Part shown: piece by piece, positions 1,761-10,720 of the stretch
Layout: each line of letters starts with the position of its first letter
Position numbering within the stretch: the stretch's first letter is position 1
Source: Saccostrea cucullata
Lineage: Eukaryota
NCBI RefSeq assembly: GCF_032062105.1
Contig: NW_026927936.1
Location: 62,001-126,000, forward strand
Length of the DNA stretch: 64,000 bases
Reading direction: 5' to 3'
The notes under the pieces: generated by a model
The model's database searches: none
The model's input: the letters and a program-made list of their open reading frames with translations, nothing else
What the model was told of the DNA's origin: nothing
Made by a program: the position numbers and the translations under genes

Positions 1761-4177
1761 AAATGTAAGGCATTCGCATACATAGCTTTTATAAAGTTCA
1801 CTGAAATTCAACATGTGCTATACAATACTTCTGCATCTCAAAGCTTTGTCATATTAACACTCTGAAGTTATCGCGTTTCAATTTATGTTTGAAACAACCT
1901 GTTGCATGTTTACGTGACGGGAATTCAAAAAGAAACTAGTATACAATACGCATCTGACCATCAACTCTCTTATAATTATTCAAAACACATGAACATGCAT
2001 TTTACAAATTGTTCATTCTATATTGTTTTTTTTAGAATAGAGTGAAAATATATTTCTCATATTTCTTGAACTCTGCAAAGTTAATAGTTTTGGTTATCTT
2101 ATTTTCTCTGTGTCTATTATAAGTTGATCCAAACCTTTTCCTTGAGGATATAATTACCTTTTTCCATAGCTCAGTTTTTGATGAATGATGCCATTTTTCT
2201 TCTCTAAACTTGGAATTATTTATTTTCTCAAAGTCTTTTAAATCAAATTTAATGGCGAACGTTTCTACTGCCGTTGAATTCTTCATTTATCACGGAAAAA
2301 TAAACATGTTGGCAAGCGAAACCTATTAAAAAAATTTGGTGATGTAAGTTTTGTTAATTGTAACTTCATCATGCCTGCTGTTATGAATTGTGTGAATTAA
2401 ATTTCCTATTTGTATATTTGATTAAAAAAGTCTTCCACACCCTGTATTAATCAGATTTTTAAAAATGGATATTGCTTCTAGGTTCAAGAGAGTAACATGC
2501 AACGCACGAATCTAAATCTCAACATCAGAGAATCTATAAGTTCTTTACACCAAATTTTGAAAAAAAATTAAACATTAAAATTTTCTGCTTGAAAAGATAT
2601 ATTTGCAAATGTTATGAACAAATTAAGGAAGGAGTACCGAGATCTCTTTTTCTTTTTATCTTTGTTTTCATTTATAACTCGCAGCAAGAATACATTAGAA
2701 GAGGTGGCATTTTAATGTATATATGAAATGTCTATGTGTGTGTTTTTCACCTGCCAGGTGTTCTAATTTTCTGTTCTCTCCAATAACCTTGCGATCCTCT
2801 CACCTTTCTCACTTTAAATGTTGAAAGCCTCGGATATTTCTCGGTGGTCTTTGCAGACCCACAAATTTTTCCCGGTTGAATCACAGCGCCCAGAACGAGG
2901 CTAACATTTTCTTAATTTGAGTGAGTTTATTAAAAACTTATATTTTCTGTTCATCGAACAGTCTCAACAAAGAGACCAATGCAGTGAAAATCTTATAGAT
3001 TTTTTCCCTCAAATTTTCTCCCAACAGGATACGATAGATCTGGACGATCAAAGAGCATTCCGGCAAACATTAGTTCGCATCATTTGCTCCTCATTTTAAT
3101 CCTCTTTGACATCTTCCGGTAGCTTGAATTTTGTATGAACATCCTCTTTAATATTGATTCATCATTTAAATAAATTTAACTTTATATACTTTAACTTTAA
3201 AAGGATTTGGAAATTGGAACCCCATCGATATAAAGAAGGTTTTAGAAAAGGACCCCTAGATATTAAGATGCGGGTGATTGTTTCTGAAGTAAGTAGAAAA
3301 TCTAAAAATTGAAAATTTCAAACGATATTTTTGAAAAATAAAAAATAGTGTTTAAAATGTTAAGATTATGGATTAAAGTATTATGATTTTATAAGCAGAT
3401 GTTCTATATGGTTTTTCATTTTTATATAGCACCCCTACGTCGCTAACAGTTATAAGTGGATTAAATAAAGAAGTTAAAATGAATAAAAAGTTGATAAGCT
3501 CTTTATAAACAAGTAGTTAACAGGTATCACACAGTTAGGATATTGTGTCGATTTCCTTTAATCTCAAAGTTTATCATCCAGAGAGAATTAGATTTTTTTA
3601 AAGTAAATTCTCCTTATATTATAAAATTTATTAATATTCTAGAACTGTTTATTTCATTTTTATTTTTTTAAAGTAGTAAATTCATTAGGTATTATTTCTC
3701 TTGGAAAAGGAAATAGGGCAGTGCATTTTGTTTTTATAGCTACATGTATTTTAAAAGAGTTTATTTCATTATATTAACCATACAGAGACATCTATTGTTT
3801 GAATTTGCAGTTTATAAAATTAAATGACATATTTTTTTAAAGTTGAGTACTGTACTATTTACTTATATTTTATATTCTTTACCCATTTTAAACTTTGAAA
3901 AACTGTCTGTATCAAAACGTTTTATTGTAAAAGTTATATAGTTTTTTTCATTTTGATTATGTAGGTATCCCAATTCAATTGCAATATGTATTTTATTTAC
4001 GTTCATGTTATACCACAACAAAATAAATAAATGTTCCATTGATATGTAATCTTTAATAAATTCTAAATAATCAAAATTTCTGAAGATTTGTCATTTTTCA
4101 AGAATAAATTTTCATTTCGTTAAATTTAATTAATTTTTTGTTAACTTTTTCTTCCTTTAAACTTCACATTACATATA

Positions 4178-4560
4178 ATTATCAAAGACCTATATATAAT
4201 AAACAAATGCTAAGTATTTAAGTTTAATGTTTTATTCGAGTTGGCAGGTATTGTCCACAGTGGTCTACACAACAGTGGGGCAGCCGGCAAAATGGCATAC
4301 CCCCAACATCAACATAAGTTGTGCCCTCCCTGACGGGAAAAGTAGCACGCTGGGTTGACCTCATTCGTGCTACGGACACATTTCAACACAAATTGTCTTT
4401 TAATTATATTATTTTGCTTTAGATTTACATTATATAAGATATAATTTTCAAAGTCAACATCACATATATCAACATCAATCATCACTTATATCAACATCAA
4501 CCACAAAAAGTCAACAAAATCAACAGTTCAATGGTTAAATTGAAGGTGACGATTTCGCCA
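4178..4560. repeat. 383-bp direct repeat B, copy B2
   Basis: Matches 5171-5553 base for base by eye (offset 993). Confidence 0.95.
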
Positions 4561-4919
4561 ATACGACCACTGTGAAGTATAGTCTAATGTCTTTCCCCGA
4601 GCTCCTTGAAATCATGGATAAATCGCCAAGTTGACACCTGTCACGCATGGTATTTGGTCAGAGATCATTCCAAAGGTCCTAGAAAACGGAAATAGCGGGC
4701 AATCCTGATCAGCACCGTCAGTCTCCTTCAACGAAATCTCTTAATACCTGAAAAGACAAAAACAAAACCACACAGCAGAAAAAGATTCTCAATAAAATTT
4801 CCATAACTTTAATAAATTGGCTATACCTAACCCATGAAAAACAATGTATACGTAAATTAAACAAACAAAAGGAGAAAGAGTAATACTTAACACCTAGCTC
4901 AAGGGTTGAGGTGGGAGGG

Positions 4920-5172
4920 TATTTCATAATACAGAAAAATAAATCGGATACTTTCATCACCCACCTTTCACTTTCATTGATGCATAGAAAAGGGGAGATA
5001 ACCCGTAAACCTAGTAACTACGTACTGACACTGTATGGATGGATAAATAAATTCCGGCTTATCTCATTTATTAATTTTTCACAAAAAGGAGGTGAATGAT
5101 GACATATAATCAAAGGATATATAGAGCTTAGATAACGACGCATATTATGAGATGAACTCAAATATGCGGTAT
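4920..5172. repeat. 253-bp direct repeat A, copy A2
   Basis: Matches 9612-9864 base for base by eye (offset 4692). Confidence 0.95.
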
Positions 5173-5553
5173 TATCAAAGACCTATATATAATAAACAAA
5201 TGCTAAGTATTTAAGTTTAATGTTTTATTCGAGTTGGCAGGTATTGTCCACAGTGGTCTACACAACAGTGGGGCAGCCGGCAAAATGGCATACCCCCAAC
5301 ATCAACATAAGTTGTGCCCTCCCTGACGGGAAAAGTAGCACGCTGGGTTGACCTCATTCGTGCTACGGACACATTTCAACACAAATTGTCTTTTAATTAT
5401 ATTATTTTGCTTTAGATTTACATTATATAAGATATAATTTTCAAAGTCAACATCACATATATCAACATCAATCATCACTTATATCAACATCAACCACAAA
5501 AAGTCAACAAAATCAACAGTTCAATGGTTAAATTGAAGGTGACGATTTCGCCA
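5171..5553. repeat. 383-bp direct repeat B, copy B1 (abuts A2, sharing AT at 5171-5172)
   Basis: Matches 4178-4560. Confidence 0.95.
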
Positions 5554-8500
5554 CATGGGCACCGTAGGTGCCCACCGCCACCTGGTGGGGGTAGGCAACT
5601 TCAATTTAACCACCCACCATGGACTCCTAGCCTACTCAAAACCCTCAGCAACCCATCCGTCGTGAACATCACTCTCTCTCATATCCAACCCACTGTAGAT
5701 TTATGCTGCATTAAAATAAATCTGGTTACCCTTCAAATTTACCGTGCCTTACCCCCCCCCTTTTCCCTGATTTTATATCTTTCGAAGTTGTATTGCTTTG
5801 GGTCTCTATTTCTGTTATTAATATCCAGCTATTTTACTCAGTCAGGAAGAAAGAACTAACTGGACTAATGTAAGAATATAAAGTGGAAAATATGTCTTAA
5901 CTAGATTTATCCCTCCTTTTTTATTTATTGGTTTATTCATTTGAATTTTATTTCTTATTCATTTTTAGGTAATTTGAAAGAAAAATTTGTAATATACTTT
6001 CCTGCAAAGATTACAAACAAGATGAATGAGATGAGCACCTATACTCTCTACCCCCCCCCCCCCCCCCTTAAGGATGATTAAGTTGTTCCTGTATTGTAGA
6101 ATAATTTTAAGTGTTCATATTCCAACTCTGTCAAGTGCAGAACATATTTTGTGATATTTTGTAACGTATCTTGCCAGTTCTGTAGAAATGAGCTTATCTA
6201 AGTACTACTTTATTTTTTAATCCAAGCTCTTCCGAAGACCATGTAAAATTGATTAAATCTTGTATATACTATTTACCTTTGAAGCCAAGAAACACAATAG
6301 GGTACATGTACTTTGTATTTACCCCTAAGCATTTGTTAATGTGGATGGACTGCACCAGACATGTAAGGCACATATGACTAAAACCTTCATTCTAAATCCC
6401 TTTCCGGCTAATACTCTATCAAATAGGCATGATCGTACTACACCTTAAGCTTCCTACGTTGGGAATTTTGGGGAGGGACCCCTCCCCCTTTCCTCCTGCA
6501 AAAATATGCTGTGGAATGGGTTATTAAAATTATAAACTTCAAAATTATTTTTAAGGCTGTAAAAAATACCTTTATGATAGAGAGCATGAAAATTAATATG
6601 CTAAATTAGTGTAAACCTATCCTTTCTATAATACCCTAAAATGCTGTCGAAGTTTATTTAATCTTAGCACTATGAAAAGTTAACTCCTACTCACTTGTGG
6701 ATTTGTATTTATATCCCCTAGCTAATCTATATTTTACTCAAGCATGCTAGAGGTTCACAACGAGATACTTTTGACTTGGCTCCGAGGTACATAAGGAGCA
6801 TAGGGCCGTTAACTGGGGCTCTTATACATGTAGGAGTAACCTGTATTTGTACCCATTAGCTGATGCATGGATGTAATTTACATGTACATATGCAATTATG
6901 CACCGACTAATGCATCTTGATCCCATACAAGATAAATGTGTAAACAGAAAATAATTCTGCTAACTGCTCACATGAGATGAGGGATAAACACATACCATAT
7001 TAATACCTGCGAATGGCAACTGGGTTTGAACTGATATTTTCAATGAAGAAATGCCCCTAAAATATGCAAATGTGTAAGCTAACAGTAAGCGCCTACTATA
7101 AAAAAAGAAAATATTGTAGGAAATGGGTCAGATTATAATCTAGCCTGTGGTATAAAATGTATCTAACACCCCCCCCCCCTCCCCGAATTTGTATATCTAT
7201 GCTGTTAGGAAATCTCGCCTTATGCGGTTCTTTCATCTTATTTATTTATTTATTTTTAAATCTTATAACTCCACATGAATAAAGCAAGTTACCTAAACAA
7301 TTTATCCTTTTTGAGTTTAAAATCTGTGAATATAGAATTTTAACTGAAGCAAGTTTTATCTGTGTGAAAATAGCAAATCCTTTTTTATCTAATAACTTAG
7401 AGACACAGCAAAAGCCAACACTGACAAAAATTTAAGCCCTATTTTAAACCTTATACTGGAAGTTTCATTATAAACCCTCTTTATTTTATTTATTTGTTTA
7501 TTTATTTATTATTTTGACCATTCATACAGCATATGCCATAAGGAAAATACATCTATTAGAAAGACCAGCACTGCGAACCTTATTCAAATGAGTCTGCATT
7601 GACTTTAGCACCTAAAGAACTCTGTAATTTGTCCCTCATCCCTTTCTGAAACTGAATTACTTGATTAAAACTGGTAAAAGTTCAGGGACTTGAAGTTGCA
7701 TTTCCTATTTTGAGGTTCACTTTCCCTGATGAGAAAGATAACTCAAAGGAATAATGTTAATTTCCTAATAATTTTGACAAGATTAGCCTATCAATTATTA
7801 TTATTTATTTATAATAGTCTTTTATTTGTAGAATTATATTTAAATACCTAAAGATTTTCTTCTTGTATAAGTCTTAAAGAACATTGACGGGAAATAAAAG
7901 CCCGTGCTGAAATTTATCTCTGTGTGAATTATCGACATTTTTGGAATAGTGTATATAATGAATTGAGTAAAATAAGTTTACCTGATTTTCATGTTAACTT
8001 AAGATAGTACAAAACTTTTCATTTACTAAACACAACTATATAAGATACAAGGCCTTTATGCAGTTAAGGGGTGAGAAGGCATTAAATGTATGTGTCTTTA
8101 TTGTGTTATCATGATATCAACAAACCTGCTCAAATAAGGTACAGGCCCTGTTAGAAAAATTCATAATTATGTTTATATACACTGAAGACGGCTTCCGAAT
8201 GTTCAAACAGCCTGACCTTCATTTATTTCCTTTATTTATAACTTGAACCAAATCAAAATGTCAACACAGAATATATATGTGAAACAAGCCTTTGACCCCC
8301 CTCTTACTTAATCTGAAGACTTATATATACATATATTAACCAGCAAAATAATAGCTAGACTTGCTAGACAATAGATATCTACATGTACTTAATTAAAATA
8401 AAATTCGGGAAATCCTATCTATATCAACTAGTGAACCATTGAGGCCCTAAATTACTATGCACATTGTTATTATTCTGGTTGAGTCTGAAGCTGTCCTCCT

Positions 8501-9611
8501 TTTCAAGCCCCCTAAGAGAAGAGATATCCGAATAGATGAGGATGCTGCTGGTCCTAATATAACTATTAATATGTAGATTTGACAGACAATGTACAATTCA
8601 ACTTGGGTGCATAGAACCTATGCCCCCAGCTTTAACAGCCTGAATTGTTCACTGCAATGCTTCCGTGCAACTGATTACACAAAATCTATTTAGTCATCAT
8701 TCATATTTACTTACCTTGAGTTTTGTCATAGCATGTGTACATGTACAACTGTAAATATGTATAAACAAATACACATCTTATTTCATGTTAAATTCATATA
8801 CATAAAAATGCATTAATTGTAATATAACAATTAACATTCAAAAGCACCACAATTTGTTCTTTATTTTACTTCAAATTATTTTATTTCACAATTGATTACT
8901 GCCTTTGTTGCAATTCTATACCTTCCAAGCCTCTCTTTGGACCATTGTTTAGGTTGAATGGCCTTGATTGAAAATTTATATCCTTTAATTAGAGTTCTGT
9001 TCCTATGTGAATCAGGGTAAATAACATTTCTAAAGACATGATACAATAGCTTTATCAAACTTTAATTTATTTTCAATCTGTATGTTTTCTATTTATTCAC
9101 TGTTTTAAGGAAAAGTTTTTTATGTCACAAAATATTTTGACTGATAAACTGATAAATACAACAAGCCCGAAGTTACAAAATAACCCATCCCCATATTGTA
9201 AGAATTATAACTATGCATATTCCCATTTCTAAACCCCCTAAAGATAGGCCAAGGGAACTAAGTATCTAAATATAGGCTACCATGTGTACGGATGTTTGAC
9301 CAATGACCTTGAATAACACGGACCGAATAAAGTTGAATTTCAAACCTATTTTTAGATTAACTCATTTTGTTTAAATAATATTTCACTAAGTACGTTTTTC
9401 CTCATTCAAAATATACTGATGAAGTTGGTTATTATTACCATACTTGTGTATCTTGTACCATGTGCCAGTGTTTAAAGTATGGATGGGAGGCAAATCCATC
9501 TGTTTCAATCCAATGAAATATTTGCCATCGAGCAATATCAATGTTGATAAGATAATCCATGTTAATTCTTTGACAGAAACTTAACTTTAAAAACTGGAAA
9601 TTATTAACAAA

Positions 9612-9864
9612 TATTTCATAATACAGAAAAATAAATCGGATACTTTCATCACCCACCTTTCACTTTCATTGATGCATAGAAAAGGGGAGATAACCCGTAA
9701 ACCTAGTAACTACGTACTGACACTGTATGGATGGATAAATAAATTCCGGCTTATCTCATTTATTAATTTTTCACAAAAAGGAGGTGAATGATGACATATA
9801 ATCAAAGGATATATAGAGCTTAGATAACGACGCATATTATGAGATGAACTCAAATATGCGGTAT
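9612..9864. repeat. 253-bp direct repeat A, copy A1
   Basis: Matches 4920-5172. Confidence 0.95.
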
Positions 9865-10620
9865 CATATTTCTTTTTTATTTTACAATAAACTTAAGAAA
9901 GTACATATACTTGATATTAAATAATACATTTACTTTGGAAATTATTTAGAGAATGGTTTTCAAATACTTTTTGAATAAGATTACCAAATTTTGTACTTAG
10001 TACTTAGTATTTCTTAATATGAAAAATATTTGATTGTGAAGTTTATGAATATTGAACTGTAGTGAAATATTAATGATTTTGTTTTCATTAAGGCTTTTTG
10101 TTTGTACATTTTTGGTTTTCATCTATATGTATAAAGATCAGGCAATGTACAGATATCAGAATATTTTAAATATGCCATGCAATATATCATGCTTGTTTAC
10201 TAGGTATAATGATTTGTGATTTGTAATCTTATACATCCATTCATTTGAGAAAACAGTGAGTAACAAAAGGTAATCATTTTCTGTTTAATTTGAATTATCA
10301 GATTTCTGAACGAAACAACCCGTGCTTTGGTGTTGGTAACAATATTGTTAATTTTTTTCTTACTAGAACAATAAAAACAAAAACAATGATACAGAACTTA
10401 ATAAAAACGACGCAAATGATAAATAAAACTTTATAACATTAAACAAAAAATTAATGTGTTATGAAATGATTTTACAGAAAAACAAACATTTTAAATTTAT
10501 TAAGAAGTAGGTAATTATATAATAAAAAGTTAAACGTATCTCAGTTTTGAAATAAAAAGTTATCATGTTACTTTTTAGAATTGGAAATAATAAGTATGTA
10601 TATATTTCAGAAAGAAAATA

Positions 10621-10720
10621 AAATATATGGAGAAAATGAACAGTATTCAAGCTCAAAAGTACAAAAGAAAAATACAATATTGAAGAAGAGCAAACACGGA
10701 CCTCTAAAACATCAGAGTTG
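10621..10720 (-). mobile_element. Penelope-like 3'-end remnant
   Basis: GAACAGTATTCAAGCTC...GAGCAAACACGGACCTC aligns with copies at 1-45, 17812-17935, 32767-32876 and 33471-33562. Confidence 0.65.

What the first reader, a model, noticed from the sequence alone, without database searches (positions are those of the whole stretch)
4178..9864. Young 5.7-kb ORF-less element with TOC1-like split direct repeats (A-body-B-A-spacer-B)
Seen: a 383-bp pair (4178-4560 = 5171-5553) and a 253-bp pair (4920-5172 = 9612-9864) interlock, and both look identical. On the minus strand the order is A1, 4058-bp body, B1A2 abutting, 359-bp unique spacer, B2. The outer ends reproduce the internal B1|A2 junction and share only an AT core (empty site would read ...CATATA-AT-CATATTT...), with no conventional TSD or TIR. 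Known: A1...B1A2B2 split direct repeats define PAT/Ngaro-type DIRS-order retrotransposons, which integrate a circular intermediate by tyrosine recombinase. The non-autonomous Chlamydomonas TOC1 has this layout including a unique spacer between A2 and B2. Inference: a recently mobilised non-autonomous YR-retroelement in a mollusc, carrying 4 kb of non-RT cargo, inserted in the Pax6 upstream desert.
Basis: partly seen in the sequence, partly recalled or inferred. Interest (0 to 1): 0.8.

Follow-up and report, generated by a model that had tools for sequence, protein, structure and literature searches.

The report
Gene-less Ngaro-type retrotransposon copy in oyster
This 5.7-kb stretch is a very recent insertion of a gene-less mobile element of the tyrosine-recombinase (Ngaro/DIRS) retrotransposon kind. 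It belongs to a family with about 85 full copies in this oyster genome, so it is a well-documented example of a known kind and not a new one.

Summary
A (4178-4560 = 5171-5553) and B (4920-5172 = 9612-9864) are 100% identical pairs, interlocked as A1-spacer-B1A2-body-B2.

It is a real, dispersed family and not an assembly artefact:
- The genome holds 85 internal B|A junctions and 258 B ends.
- The junction is followed by the body in 68 copies and by the spacer in none.

Three tests support a replicative, recombinase-type element:
1. Paralogous empty sites of one copy show precise insertion, with no duplication and no loss, at a TTAT that matches the element's own end-to-start junction (GGTA|TTATC). 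TAT follows the right end in most copies examined.
2. A1/A2 and B1/B2 of one copy are more alike (98-100%) than copies are to each other (94-98%), and they share private variants. Both repeats are therefore remade from one template at each cycle.
3. An intact RT + tyrosine recombinase + GDSL-hydrolase (Ngaro-like) element in the same genome has the same A1-body-B1A2-spacer-B2 layout.

The element has no ORF and no detectable RT, recombinase or hydrolase remnant. No coding partner with matching ends was found among 13 recombinase families sampled.

Other notes of this scan report similar non-coding Ngaro-type elements elsewhere in this genome.

Verdict: new member of a known kind.

The parts
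4179..4560 (-). Terminal repeat A1 (382 bp; 4178 is a target base). On the inferred minus-strand reading it is the Ngaro-type 'B2' repeat. It is the most conserved part of the family.
   Evidence: 100% identical to 5172-5553. It is 96-100% identical even in lineages whose body is 63-89% identical. Left junctions of 22 copies always start TTATC, preceded by a variable base.
4561..4919 (-). Unique 359-bp spacer between A1 and B1 (the 'A2-spacer-B2' spacer on the minus-strand reading).
   Evidence: It is present once per composite copy, with 136 first-look candidates in the genome and the 40 scored at 91-100% identity. It is 86-90% identical in old lineages. An intact Ngaro-like element in the same genome has a 394-bp spacer at the equivalent place.
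4920..5171 (-). Internal repeat B1 (252 bp), ending GCGGTA.
   Evidence: 100% identical to 9612-9863. It shares the variant 115C>T with B2 of this copy.
5131..5176 (.). Hairpin spanning the internal B1|A2 junction (5171|5172). GATAA (5131-5135) pairs with TTATC (5172-5176), and an 8-bp stem CGCATATT/AATATGCG plus a 4-bp stem lie inside.
   Evidence: RNA fold energy is -16.9 kcal/mol with z = -4.9 on the + strand, and -18.3 with z = -4.1 on the - strand; 0 of 200 shuffles fold as well. The differences seen in reads and older lineages at 5130, 5138 and 5147 fall at unpaired positions. The 3' arm is conserved in 258 genomic sites.
5172..5553 (-). Internal repeat A2 (382 bp), abutting B1.
   Evidence: The junction sequence ATATGCGGTA|TTATCAAAGACC is found 85 times in the genome.
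5554..9611 (-). Non-coding internal body (4058 bp). Its first ~125 nt (5554-5677) are as conserved as A.
   Evidence: No ORF exceeds 111 aa. tblastn and profile searches with resident Ngaro RT, YR and hydrolase proteins find no similarity. At least 28 full-length bodies at 89-100% identity are in the genome, and partial ones reach down to 74%.
9612..9863 (-). Terminal repeat B2 (252 bp; 9864 is a target base). It is the Ngaro-type 'A1' repeat on the minus-strand reading.
   Evidence: Right junctions of 18 copies read GCGGTA + n + TAT. This copy reads GCGGTA|TCAT, one of the few without a T at +2.

Best explanation
Window 4179-9863 is a recent insertion of a non-autonomous tyrosine-recombinase retrotransposon with Ngaro-type split direct repeats.

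Read on the minus strand, by analogy with coding Ngaro-like elements of the same genome, the layout is:
- A1 (252 bp)
- non-coding body (4058 bp)
- B1 (382 bp) abutting A2 (252 bp)
- spacer (359 bp)
- B2 (382 bp)

Inferred cycle:
1. An RNA that lacks most of the two outer repeats is reverse-transcribed by enzymes supplied in trans.
2. The missing outer repeats are rebuilt from the internal B1A2 copy, so that the two ends can be joined into the same sequence as the internal junction (GGTA|TTATC).
3. A tyrosine recombinase then exchanges strands between that junction and a genomic site that resembles it (A|TTAT). The element is inserted with no duplication and no loss of target bases.

Shown here:
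- the architecture and its fixed order in all copies
- precise insertion at a TTAT site
- the preference for a junction-like target
- repeats remade together at each cycle
- the same layout in an intact RT-YR-hydrolase element
- reads of the family in poly(A) RNA libraries

Inferred only:
- the RNA ends and the transcribed strand
- the joined or circular intermediate
- the enzyme source
- any role of the junction-spanning hairpin in bringing the ends together
For: (1) Architecture. The genome holds 85 B|A junctions and 258 B ends against 0 in the reversed-pattern control. All composites have one order: the junction is followed by the body 68 times and by the spacer 0 times.

(2) Integration. 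Two paralogous empty sites on the same contig as copy C23227 read ...TTTTTCATG|TTATATATTTG... The filled site reads ...CATG|TTATC...GCGGTA|TTATATATTTG... There is no TSD and no deletion. Across copies, the right flank has T at +1 in 10 of 18, T at +2 in 15 of 18, A at +3 in 17 of 18 and T at +4 in 17 of 18. The left flank has A at -1 in 13 of 22. This mimics the junction GGTA|TTAT. It fits the published observation that DIRS-order elements are flanked by a short sequence, one copy from the circle junction and one from the target (PMC7192593).

(3) Repeats remade each cycle. Eight variants seen in no other sampled copy are present in both repeats of their own copy:
- C15112 B: 172A>G
- C20703 B: 58T>A and 250G>A
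- C23845 B: 94A>C
- C23227 B: 27G>T and 78G>A
- C149 A: 52A>C and 250G>T
Within-copy identity is 98.0-100% against 94-98% between copies, in four copies of diverged lineages.

(4) An intact resident element (L070) has RVT_1, Phage_integrase and GDSL-like ORFs. Its layout is A1 187 bp, ORFs, B1 548 bp abutting A2, a 394-bp spacer and B2. Its right flank starts with the first 5 nt of its own A. Several other sampled recombinase families show direct repeats spaced 0.4-1 kb apart in the sampled flank.

(5) The genome has at least 1184 recombinase candidates, many with intact frames.

(6) Oligo-dT RNA reads cover A, B and the B|A junction at depth 50-200.
Against: - No coding relative with homologous A/B ends was found. 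Every sampled copy bearing the A/B ends is non-coding. Thirteen sampled recombinase families share no sequence with the element.
- The RNA evidence is weak. The reads are unstranded. They carry fixed differences, so they come from sister lineages. Their depth profile roughly follows mappable copy number, so element-driven transcription and transcript ends are not shown.
- No empty allele of this particular locus was seen.
- A two-junction circle should open at either junction, yet only one permutation exists. Canonical Ngaro and PAT families also occur in one fixed order, which is my own knowledge and was not tested here.
- At the left junction the element's T is always kept, while the matching position at the right junction varies. 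A simple exchange within a 4-bp core does not explain this.
Confidence: 0.8

Rival explanations
1. It is a DNA-only tyrosine-recombinase element (Crypton-like, non-autonomous). The composite would be excised as a double-stranded circle and re-integrated at junction-like sites without any RNA step. The identity of A1/A2 and B1/B2 would be kept up by gene conversion between the repeats.
For: Insertion without TSD at a site resembling the junction fits any tyrosine recombinase. Recombinase genes are abundant. No RNA intermediate is demonstrated.
Against: Every sampled private variant of young copies that lies in a repeat and is shared is present in both repeats. Within-copy identity exceeds between-copy identity in all four lineages tested, which would need very efficient conversion. 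The exact layout, including the spacer, is that of a resident element that encodes RT as well as the recombinase.
Confidence: 0.12
2. It is two independent short and long units (A-spacer-B and A-body-B) that share ends and sit in tandem. They would be mobilised as single-stranded or rolling-circle DNA (Helitron-like, or IS200/IS605-like with a subterminal hairpin and a guide pairing).
For: A subterminal hairpin lies next to the 3' end, and GATAA can pair with the TTATC or TTAT cleavage or target site. Insertion is often between A and T. Solo A-spacer-B and A-body-B forms exist: C22514/C22989 and C9813.
Against: Only the order short-long exists genome-wide, 68 to 0. No long-long, short-short or long-short tandems were seen. 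The ends are TTATC...GCGGTA, not TC...CTRR. The repeats of one composite share private variants, which faithful DNA copying of two separate units would not give. The solo forms are the expected products of recombination between A1/A2 or B1/B2.
Confidence: 0.04
3. It is an assembly artefact, or a rearranged LTR-retrotransposon derivative (LARD/TRIM-like).
For: Identical repeats can be mis-joined by assemblers. The within-copy repeat identity is LTR-like.
Against: The same layout occurs in 85 places on many contigs, including lineages 13-25% diverged. Independent public runs hold the junctions. There is no TSD, no TG...CA ends and no complete LTR at either end.
Confidence: 0.02

Closest known systems
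Ngaro-type YR retrotransposons (DIRS order), including the intact RT-YR-GDSL-hydrolase element found here at G000:C12352 (L070)
   Same: Both have split direct repeats with an internal B1A2 junction equal to the joined termini. In both, a spacer of about 360-390 bp lies between A2 and B2. In both, the flank starts with the first bases of the element's own A. Neither has a TSD. Some Ngaro elements are reported to carry a hydrolase (PMC7192593), and Ngaro is reported as abundant in the mollusc Lottia (PMC4157794).
   Different: This element has no ORFs and no detectable protein remnants. It shares no nucleotide similarity with the 13 sampled coding families. Its repeat lengths differ (252/382 bp against 187/548 bp).
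TOC1 of Chlamydomonas reinhardtii (non-autonomous DIRS retrotransposon; PMC9940879)
   Same: Both are non-coding elements of about 5.7 kb of the YR-retrotransposon order with an unusual split terminal-repeat arrangement. The details of TOC1's layout are recalled from memory only, because the original paper is not held.
   Different: TOC1 is from a green alga and is assigned to the PAT/Toc branch, which carries a methyltransferase. Here the resident coding elements with the same layout gave no methyltransferase hit and carry a hydrolase, which points to Ngaro. No sequence relation is expected.
SIRE/VIPER of trypanosomatids (a non-autonomous element derived from a YR retrotransposon; PMC6681497, PMC12278014; not read in detail here)
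   Same: It is a precedent for a high-copy non-autonomous derivative of a YR retrotransposon.
   Different: SIRE is a short element related in sequence to its VIPER partner. Here the element is long (5.7 kb) and no sequence-related partner was found.
Cryptons (YR DNA transposons; PMC3212892)
   Same: Integration is by recombinase, without a true TSD, at sites sharing a few bases with the element's joined ends.
   Different: Cryptons move as DNA and lack split direct repeats that are remade at each cycle. The concerted identity of A1/A2 and B1/B2 points to a replicative, template-copying step.

Membership tests
DIRS-order YR retrotransposon, Ngaro/PAT type (as a non-autonomous derivative) | Split direct repeats A1...B1A2...B2, with the internal junction equal to the joined termini | tested here: met
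   The same holds in 85 genomic copies.
DIRS-order YR retrotransposon, Ngaro/PAT type (as a non-autonomous derivative) | No target-site duplication; a short core at both ends, one copy from the element's junction and one from the target | tested here: met
   Paralogous empty sites carry a single TTAT. The right flank reads nTAT in most of 18 copies. The published description is in PMC7192593.
DIRS-order YR retrotransposon, Ngaro/PAT type (as a non-autonomous derivative) | Outer repeats restored from the internal copy at each cycle (repeats of one copy evolve together) | tested here: met
   Eight private variants are shared by both repeats. Within-copy identity is 98-100% against 94-98% between copies.
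DIRS-order YR retrotransposon, Ngaro/PAT type (as a non-autonomous derivative) | Encodes reverse transcriptase/RNase H and a tyrosine recombinase | tested here: not met
   No ORF exceeds 111 aa. tblastn, tblastx and profile searches find no RT, YR or hydrolase remnant. The element can therefore only be a non-autonomous member.
DIRS-order YR retrotransposon, Ngaro/PAT type (as a non-autonomous derivative) | A coding relative with homologous ends in the same genome (the source of enzymes) | tested here: inconclusive
   Thirteen YR families were sampled out of at least 1184 candidate sites, and none is similar. All checked A/B-bearing copies are non-coding.
DIRS-order YR retrotransposon, Ngaro/PAT type (as a non-autonomous derivative) | RNA intermediate (a transcript spanning the internal junction) | tested here: inconclusive
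   Oligo-dT reads cover A, B and the junction, but they are unstranded, come from sister lineages and follow copy number.
DIRS-order YR retrotransposon, Ngaro/PAT type (as a non-autonomous derivative) | Extrachromosomal cDNA or a circle carrying the joined ends | not testable with these tools
   It needs long reads or PCR for the order body-B|A-spacer, which is absent from the genome (0 hits).
Helitron / rolling-circle element | 5'-TC...CTRR-3' ends, insertion between A and T, and DNA copying without remaking of repeats | tested here: not met
   The ends are TTATC...GCGGTA. A at -1 (13 of 22) and T at +1 (10 of 18) are frequent but not constant. There is a single fixed order of units. The repeats evolve together.
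LTR retrotransposon derivative (LARD/TRIM) | Complete LTRs at both ends, TG...CA termini and a 4-6 bp TSD | tested here: not met
TOC1-like (Toc branch of PAT elements) | Relation to methyltransferase-bearing PAT/Toc elements | not tested
   Only a layout analogy is available. The resident element with the same layout gave RVT_1, Phage_integrase and GDSL hits and no methyltransferase hit. The TOC1 paper is not held.

The most novel reading that the evidence does not exclude
The family may have no sequence-related partner at all. It would be recognised in trans through structure: the junction-spanning hairpin, in which GATAA pairs with the element's first bases TTATC. The same pairing could bring the two ends of a linear single-stranded cDNA together for joining. 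It could also select TTAT genomic targets by base pairing, which would be a nucleic-acid-guided choice of cleavage and target sites like that of IS200/IS605, but in a eukaryotic YR retroelement. The extreme conservation of A plus the first ~125 nt of the body (96-100% while the body drifts to 63-89%) would then mark the cis-acting RNA or DNA module.
Probability: 0.1. Interest if true: 0.7.

Novelty: new member of a known kind. Interest (0 to 1): 0.35.

Why it matters
The mechanism of YR retrotransposons rests largely on models. The Dictyostelium work read here (PMC7192593) tests the DIRS-1 model experimentally. This family offers a clean natural data set in an animal:
- about 85 composites of several concurrently young lineages
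- a verified empty site
- a defined junction-like target (A|TTAT)
- a fixed permutation (68 to 0)
- direct sequence evidence that both outer repeats are rebuilt at every cycle

It also supplies a diagnostic product for the joined intermediate. The order body-B|A-spacer is absent from the genome, so any read or amplicon showing it would mark a joined or tandem intermediate.

For the locus itself, the insertion is a very young structural variant about 43.5 kb upstream of a Pax6-like paired-box exon. It may be polymorphic in oyster populations. No regulatory effect is shown.

Tried and rejected
- Rfam (E up to 1) and tRNA scans of 3500-10500 gave only a chance snoRNA-like hit. I therefore drop the ideas of a hammerhead/retrozyme, an HDV-like ribozyme or a SINE head in A.
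- A 24-aa similarity between a minus-strand ORF in A and the hydrolase of the resident Ngaro-like element (tblastn E = 0.06) was not confirmed by Pfam or by a profile of four resident hydrolases. I treat it as chance.
- Long B-to-B spacings, checked in two copies, did not hide a coding version. C416 is a copy at about 87% identity with a 1.27-kb nested insert. In C3311 only 700 bp of the internal region was read, and it is body-like at 72%.
- The older lineages C4879 and C7066 are also non-coding.
- The junction hairpin of the resident coding element is not significant (z = -0.9), so the hairpin is not shown to be general.
- No alternative haplotig of this locus is in the assembly, and no empty-site joint was seen in reads.
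- The pile-up of read starts at 4217 was considered as a minus-strand poly(A) site, because it lies 14 nt after an AATAAA. It is equally explained by clipping of reads from a lineage that differs in A positions 15-39, so it is not used.
- For variant listing, a majority letter per column of the A and B alignments was computed inside a script. It was not printed or kept.


Full report
**Observation**

The two repeat pairs are exactly as described:
- A = 4178-4560 = 5171-5553 (383 bp, 100%).
- B = 4920-5172 = 9612-9864 (253 bp, 100%).
- Similarity beyond the pair ends is at chance level.

On the + strand the order is:
- A1
- spacer (4561-4919, 359 bp)
- B1 abutting A2
- body (5554-9611, 4058 bp)
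- B2

No ORF exceeds 111 aa. There are no inverted repeats of 30 nt or more, no tRNA and no Rfam family.

**A real, dispersed family**

The window lies on contig C10073 of a 1.17-Gb assembly.
- A, B, spacer and body each hit many contigs, with the same A-to-A spacing (993 bp) and B-to-B spacing (about 4.7 kb).
- A 23-nt B-end pattern occurs 258 times, against 0 for the reversed control.
- The internal junction ATATGCGGTA|TTATCAAAGACC occurs 85 times.
- Full-length bodies range from 100% down to 89% identity, and partial matches reach 74%.
- Three older copies that I read in full keep the same layout and are also non-coding. They are C416, C4879 and C7066, with bodies 63-89% identical.
- Genome-wide, the junction plus A is followed by the body in 68 cases and by the spacer in 0. 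The composite is therefore one mobile unit with one fixed order, not two independent monomers.
- Rarer forms are what recombination between the repeats, or internal deletion, would give. They are solo A-spacer-B (C22514, with its haplotig twin C22989), A-body-B (C9813) and body-deleted minis (C909, C8736).

**Ends and target**

I used 22 left and 18 right junctions, with haplotig twins removed.
- The element always starts TTATC and ends GCGGTA.
- The base before it varies (A in 13 of 22).
- The right flank reads T (10 of 18), T (15 of 18), A (17 of 18), T (17 of 18).
- The internal junction is GGTA|TTATC, so targets mimic the element's own end-to-start junction.
- In this copy, bases 4178 (A) and 9864 (T) are target bases. 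The element proper is 4179-9863.

A direct test came from copy C23227, whose flank belongs to a local triplicated segment.
- The two uninterrupted paralogues read ...TTTTTCATG|TTATATATTTG... and ...TTTTGCATG|CTATATATTTG...
- The filled site reads ...CATG|TTATC...GCGGTA|TTATATATTTG...

Insertion is therefore precise, with no duplication and no loss, at a TTAT identical to the element's first four bases. This matches the published description for DIRS-order elements: a short sequence flanks the element on both sides, one copy from the circle junction and one from the target (PMC7192593).

**Repeats are remade at each cycle**

I compared 38 A and 34 B sequences. Eight variants seen in no other sampled copy are present in both repeats of their own copy:
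- C15112 B: 172A>G
- C20703 B: 58T>A and 250G>A
- C23845 B: 94A>C
- C23227 B: 27G>T and 78G>A
- C149 A: 52A>C and 250G>T

Only a few variants are confined to one repeat.

In four copies from diverged lineages, A1/A2 are 99.7-100% alike and B1/B2 are 98.0-100% alike. Between copies, A is 96-98% and B is 94-98%. There is no fixed A1-versus-A2 or B1-versus-B2 difference anywhere.

This is the LTR-like signature of a replicative cycle in which both copies of each repeat come from one template. It argues against faithful DNA copying of a dimer.

**A coding element with the same layout**

A Pfam Phage_integrase search found at least 1184 candidate sites, many with open frames. The best family encodes RVT_1, Phage_integrase with its SAM-like domain, and a GDSL-like hydrolase.

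A full copy (L070) has this layout:
- A1 (187 bp)
- the ORFs
- B1 (548 bp) abutting A2 (187 bp)
- a spacer (394 bp)
- B2 (548 bp)

Its right flank begins TAATA, which is the first five bases of its own A. Some Ngaro elements are known to carry a hydrolase (PMC7192593).

Read on the minus strand, the window element has the same plan, spacer included. Several other sampled recombinase families show direct repeats spaced 0.4-1 kb apart in the sampled flank.

**What was not found**
- No nucleotide or protein similarity links the element to this family or to 12 other sampled recombinase families.
- Every A/B-bearing copy that I read is non-coding. The enzyme source remains unknown.
- RNA evidence is weak. 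Oligo-dT reads of two 2026 runs cover A, B and the B|A junction at depth 50-200. That is too deep for DNA contamination, which would have to be about 40% of the library. But the reads are unstranded and carry fixed differences of a sister lineage, for example the TG insert after 5185 that about half of the genomic copies also carry. Their depth also roughly follows mappable copy number.
- No empty allele of this locus was seen.

**Conserved module and hairpin**
- Against old lineages, A is 96-100% identical and the first ~125 nt of the body are 98-99% in two of the three old copies compared (88% in the third). B is 92-95%, the spacer 86-90% and the rest of the body 63-89%.
- The B|A junction lies inside a strong hairpin at 5131-5176, with z = -4.9 on the + strand and -4.1 on the - strand. 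Its outer stem pairs GATAA with the element's first bases TTATC.
- Lineage differences at 5130, 5138 and 5147 fall at unpaired positions.
- In a linear single strand this pairing would place the 5' end next to the 3' end. I offer that only as an inference. The equivalent hairpin in the coding element is not significant.

**Context**
- A PAX paired-box exon lies at 53400-53891 on the + strand, about 43.5 kb downstream of the element. The Pfam E-value is 8e-68 and the best PDB match is PAX-6 at 3e-71.
- Notes of this scan, which are AI notes and were used as leads, call this genome an oyster. They list several other coding and non-coding Ngaro-type elements in it, including a followed-up 7.4-kb gene-less one. 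The scan has therefore met this kind before on other DNA of the same genome. I found the coding element and the layout independently here.

**Verdict**

This is a young copy of a non-autonomous Ngaro-type YR retrotransposon family, with 0 differences over 636 bp of repeats. It is a new member of a known kind. The corrections concern the core (TTAT, not AT), the nearest relatives (Ngaro-like, not PAT/TOC1), the 'cargo' (the family's own non-coding interior) and the missing partner.

Noticed in passing
L070 (G000:C12352:20300-29800), element about 3016-8461: This is an apparently intact Ngaro-like retrotransposon. It has an RT ORF (637 aa), a tyrosine recombinase (313 aa) and a GDSL-like hydrolase (195 aa). 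Its split repeats are 187 and 548 bp, with a 394-bp spacer between A2 and B2. At least six copies 97-99.6% alike are in the genome (L061-L066).
   Followed up: partly
G000:C23227 around 982.9-995.2 kb (L020, L058, L068, L069): The flank of one family copy belongs to a local segment present three times on the same contig, at 91-97% identity. Only the middle copy carries the insertion. This provided the empty sites.
   Followed up: yes
G000 contigs C22781/C7780 and C22514/C22989: These contig pairs share about 99% identical flanks around the same insertion, so the assembly keeps haplotig duplicates. C7780 carries many extra differences in its A1 (21 positions), possibly from a low-quality contig.
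   Followed up: no
window 53400-53891 (+): This open frame encodes a complete paired-box domain (Pfam PAX, E = 8e-68) whose best solved-structure match is PAX-6 (3e-71). The element lies about 43.5 kb upstream of it.
   Followed up: partly
window 4236-4385 (-): The GC-richer core of repeat A folds better than shuffles on the minus strand (z = -3.1; + strand z = -1.5). It is 96-100% conserved across lineages, and too few substitutions exist to test covariation.
   Followed up: partly
window 10610-10664 (right flank, query positions 745-800): A motif of about 50 bp here matches hundreds of places in the genome at 88-100% identity (482 first-look candidates). It is probably the edge of another short interspersed repeat.
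   Followed up: no
L073-L084 (12 sampled tyrosine-recombinase loci of G000): At least three more families (L075, L079, L083) carry an ORF of about 205 aa after the recombinase that aligns with the GDSL-like hydrolase. Several loci show direct repeats spaced 0.4-1 kb apart in the sampled flank, so split repeats with a spacer may be common among this genome's YR retrotransposons.
   Followed up: partly
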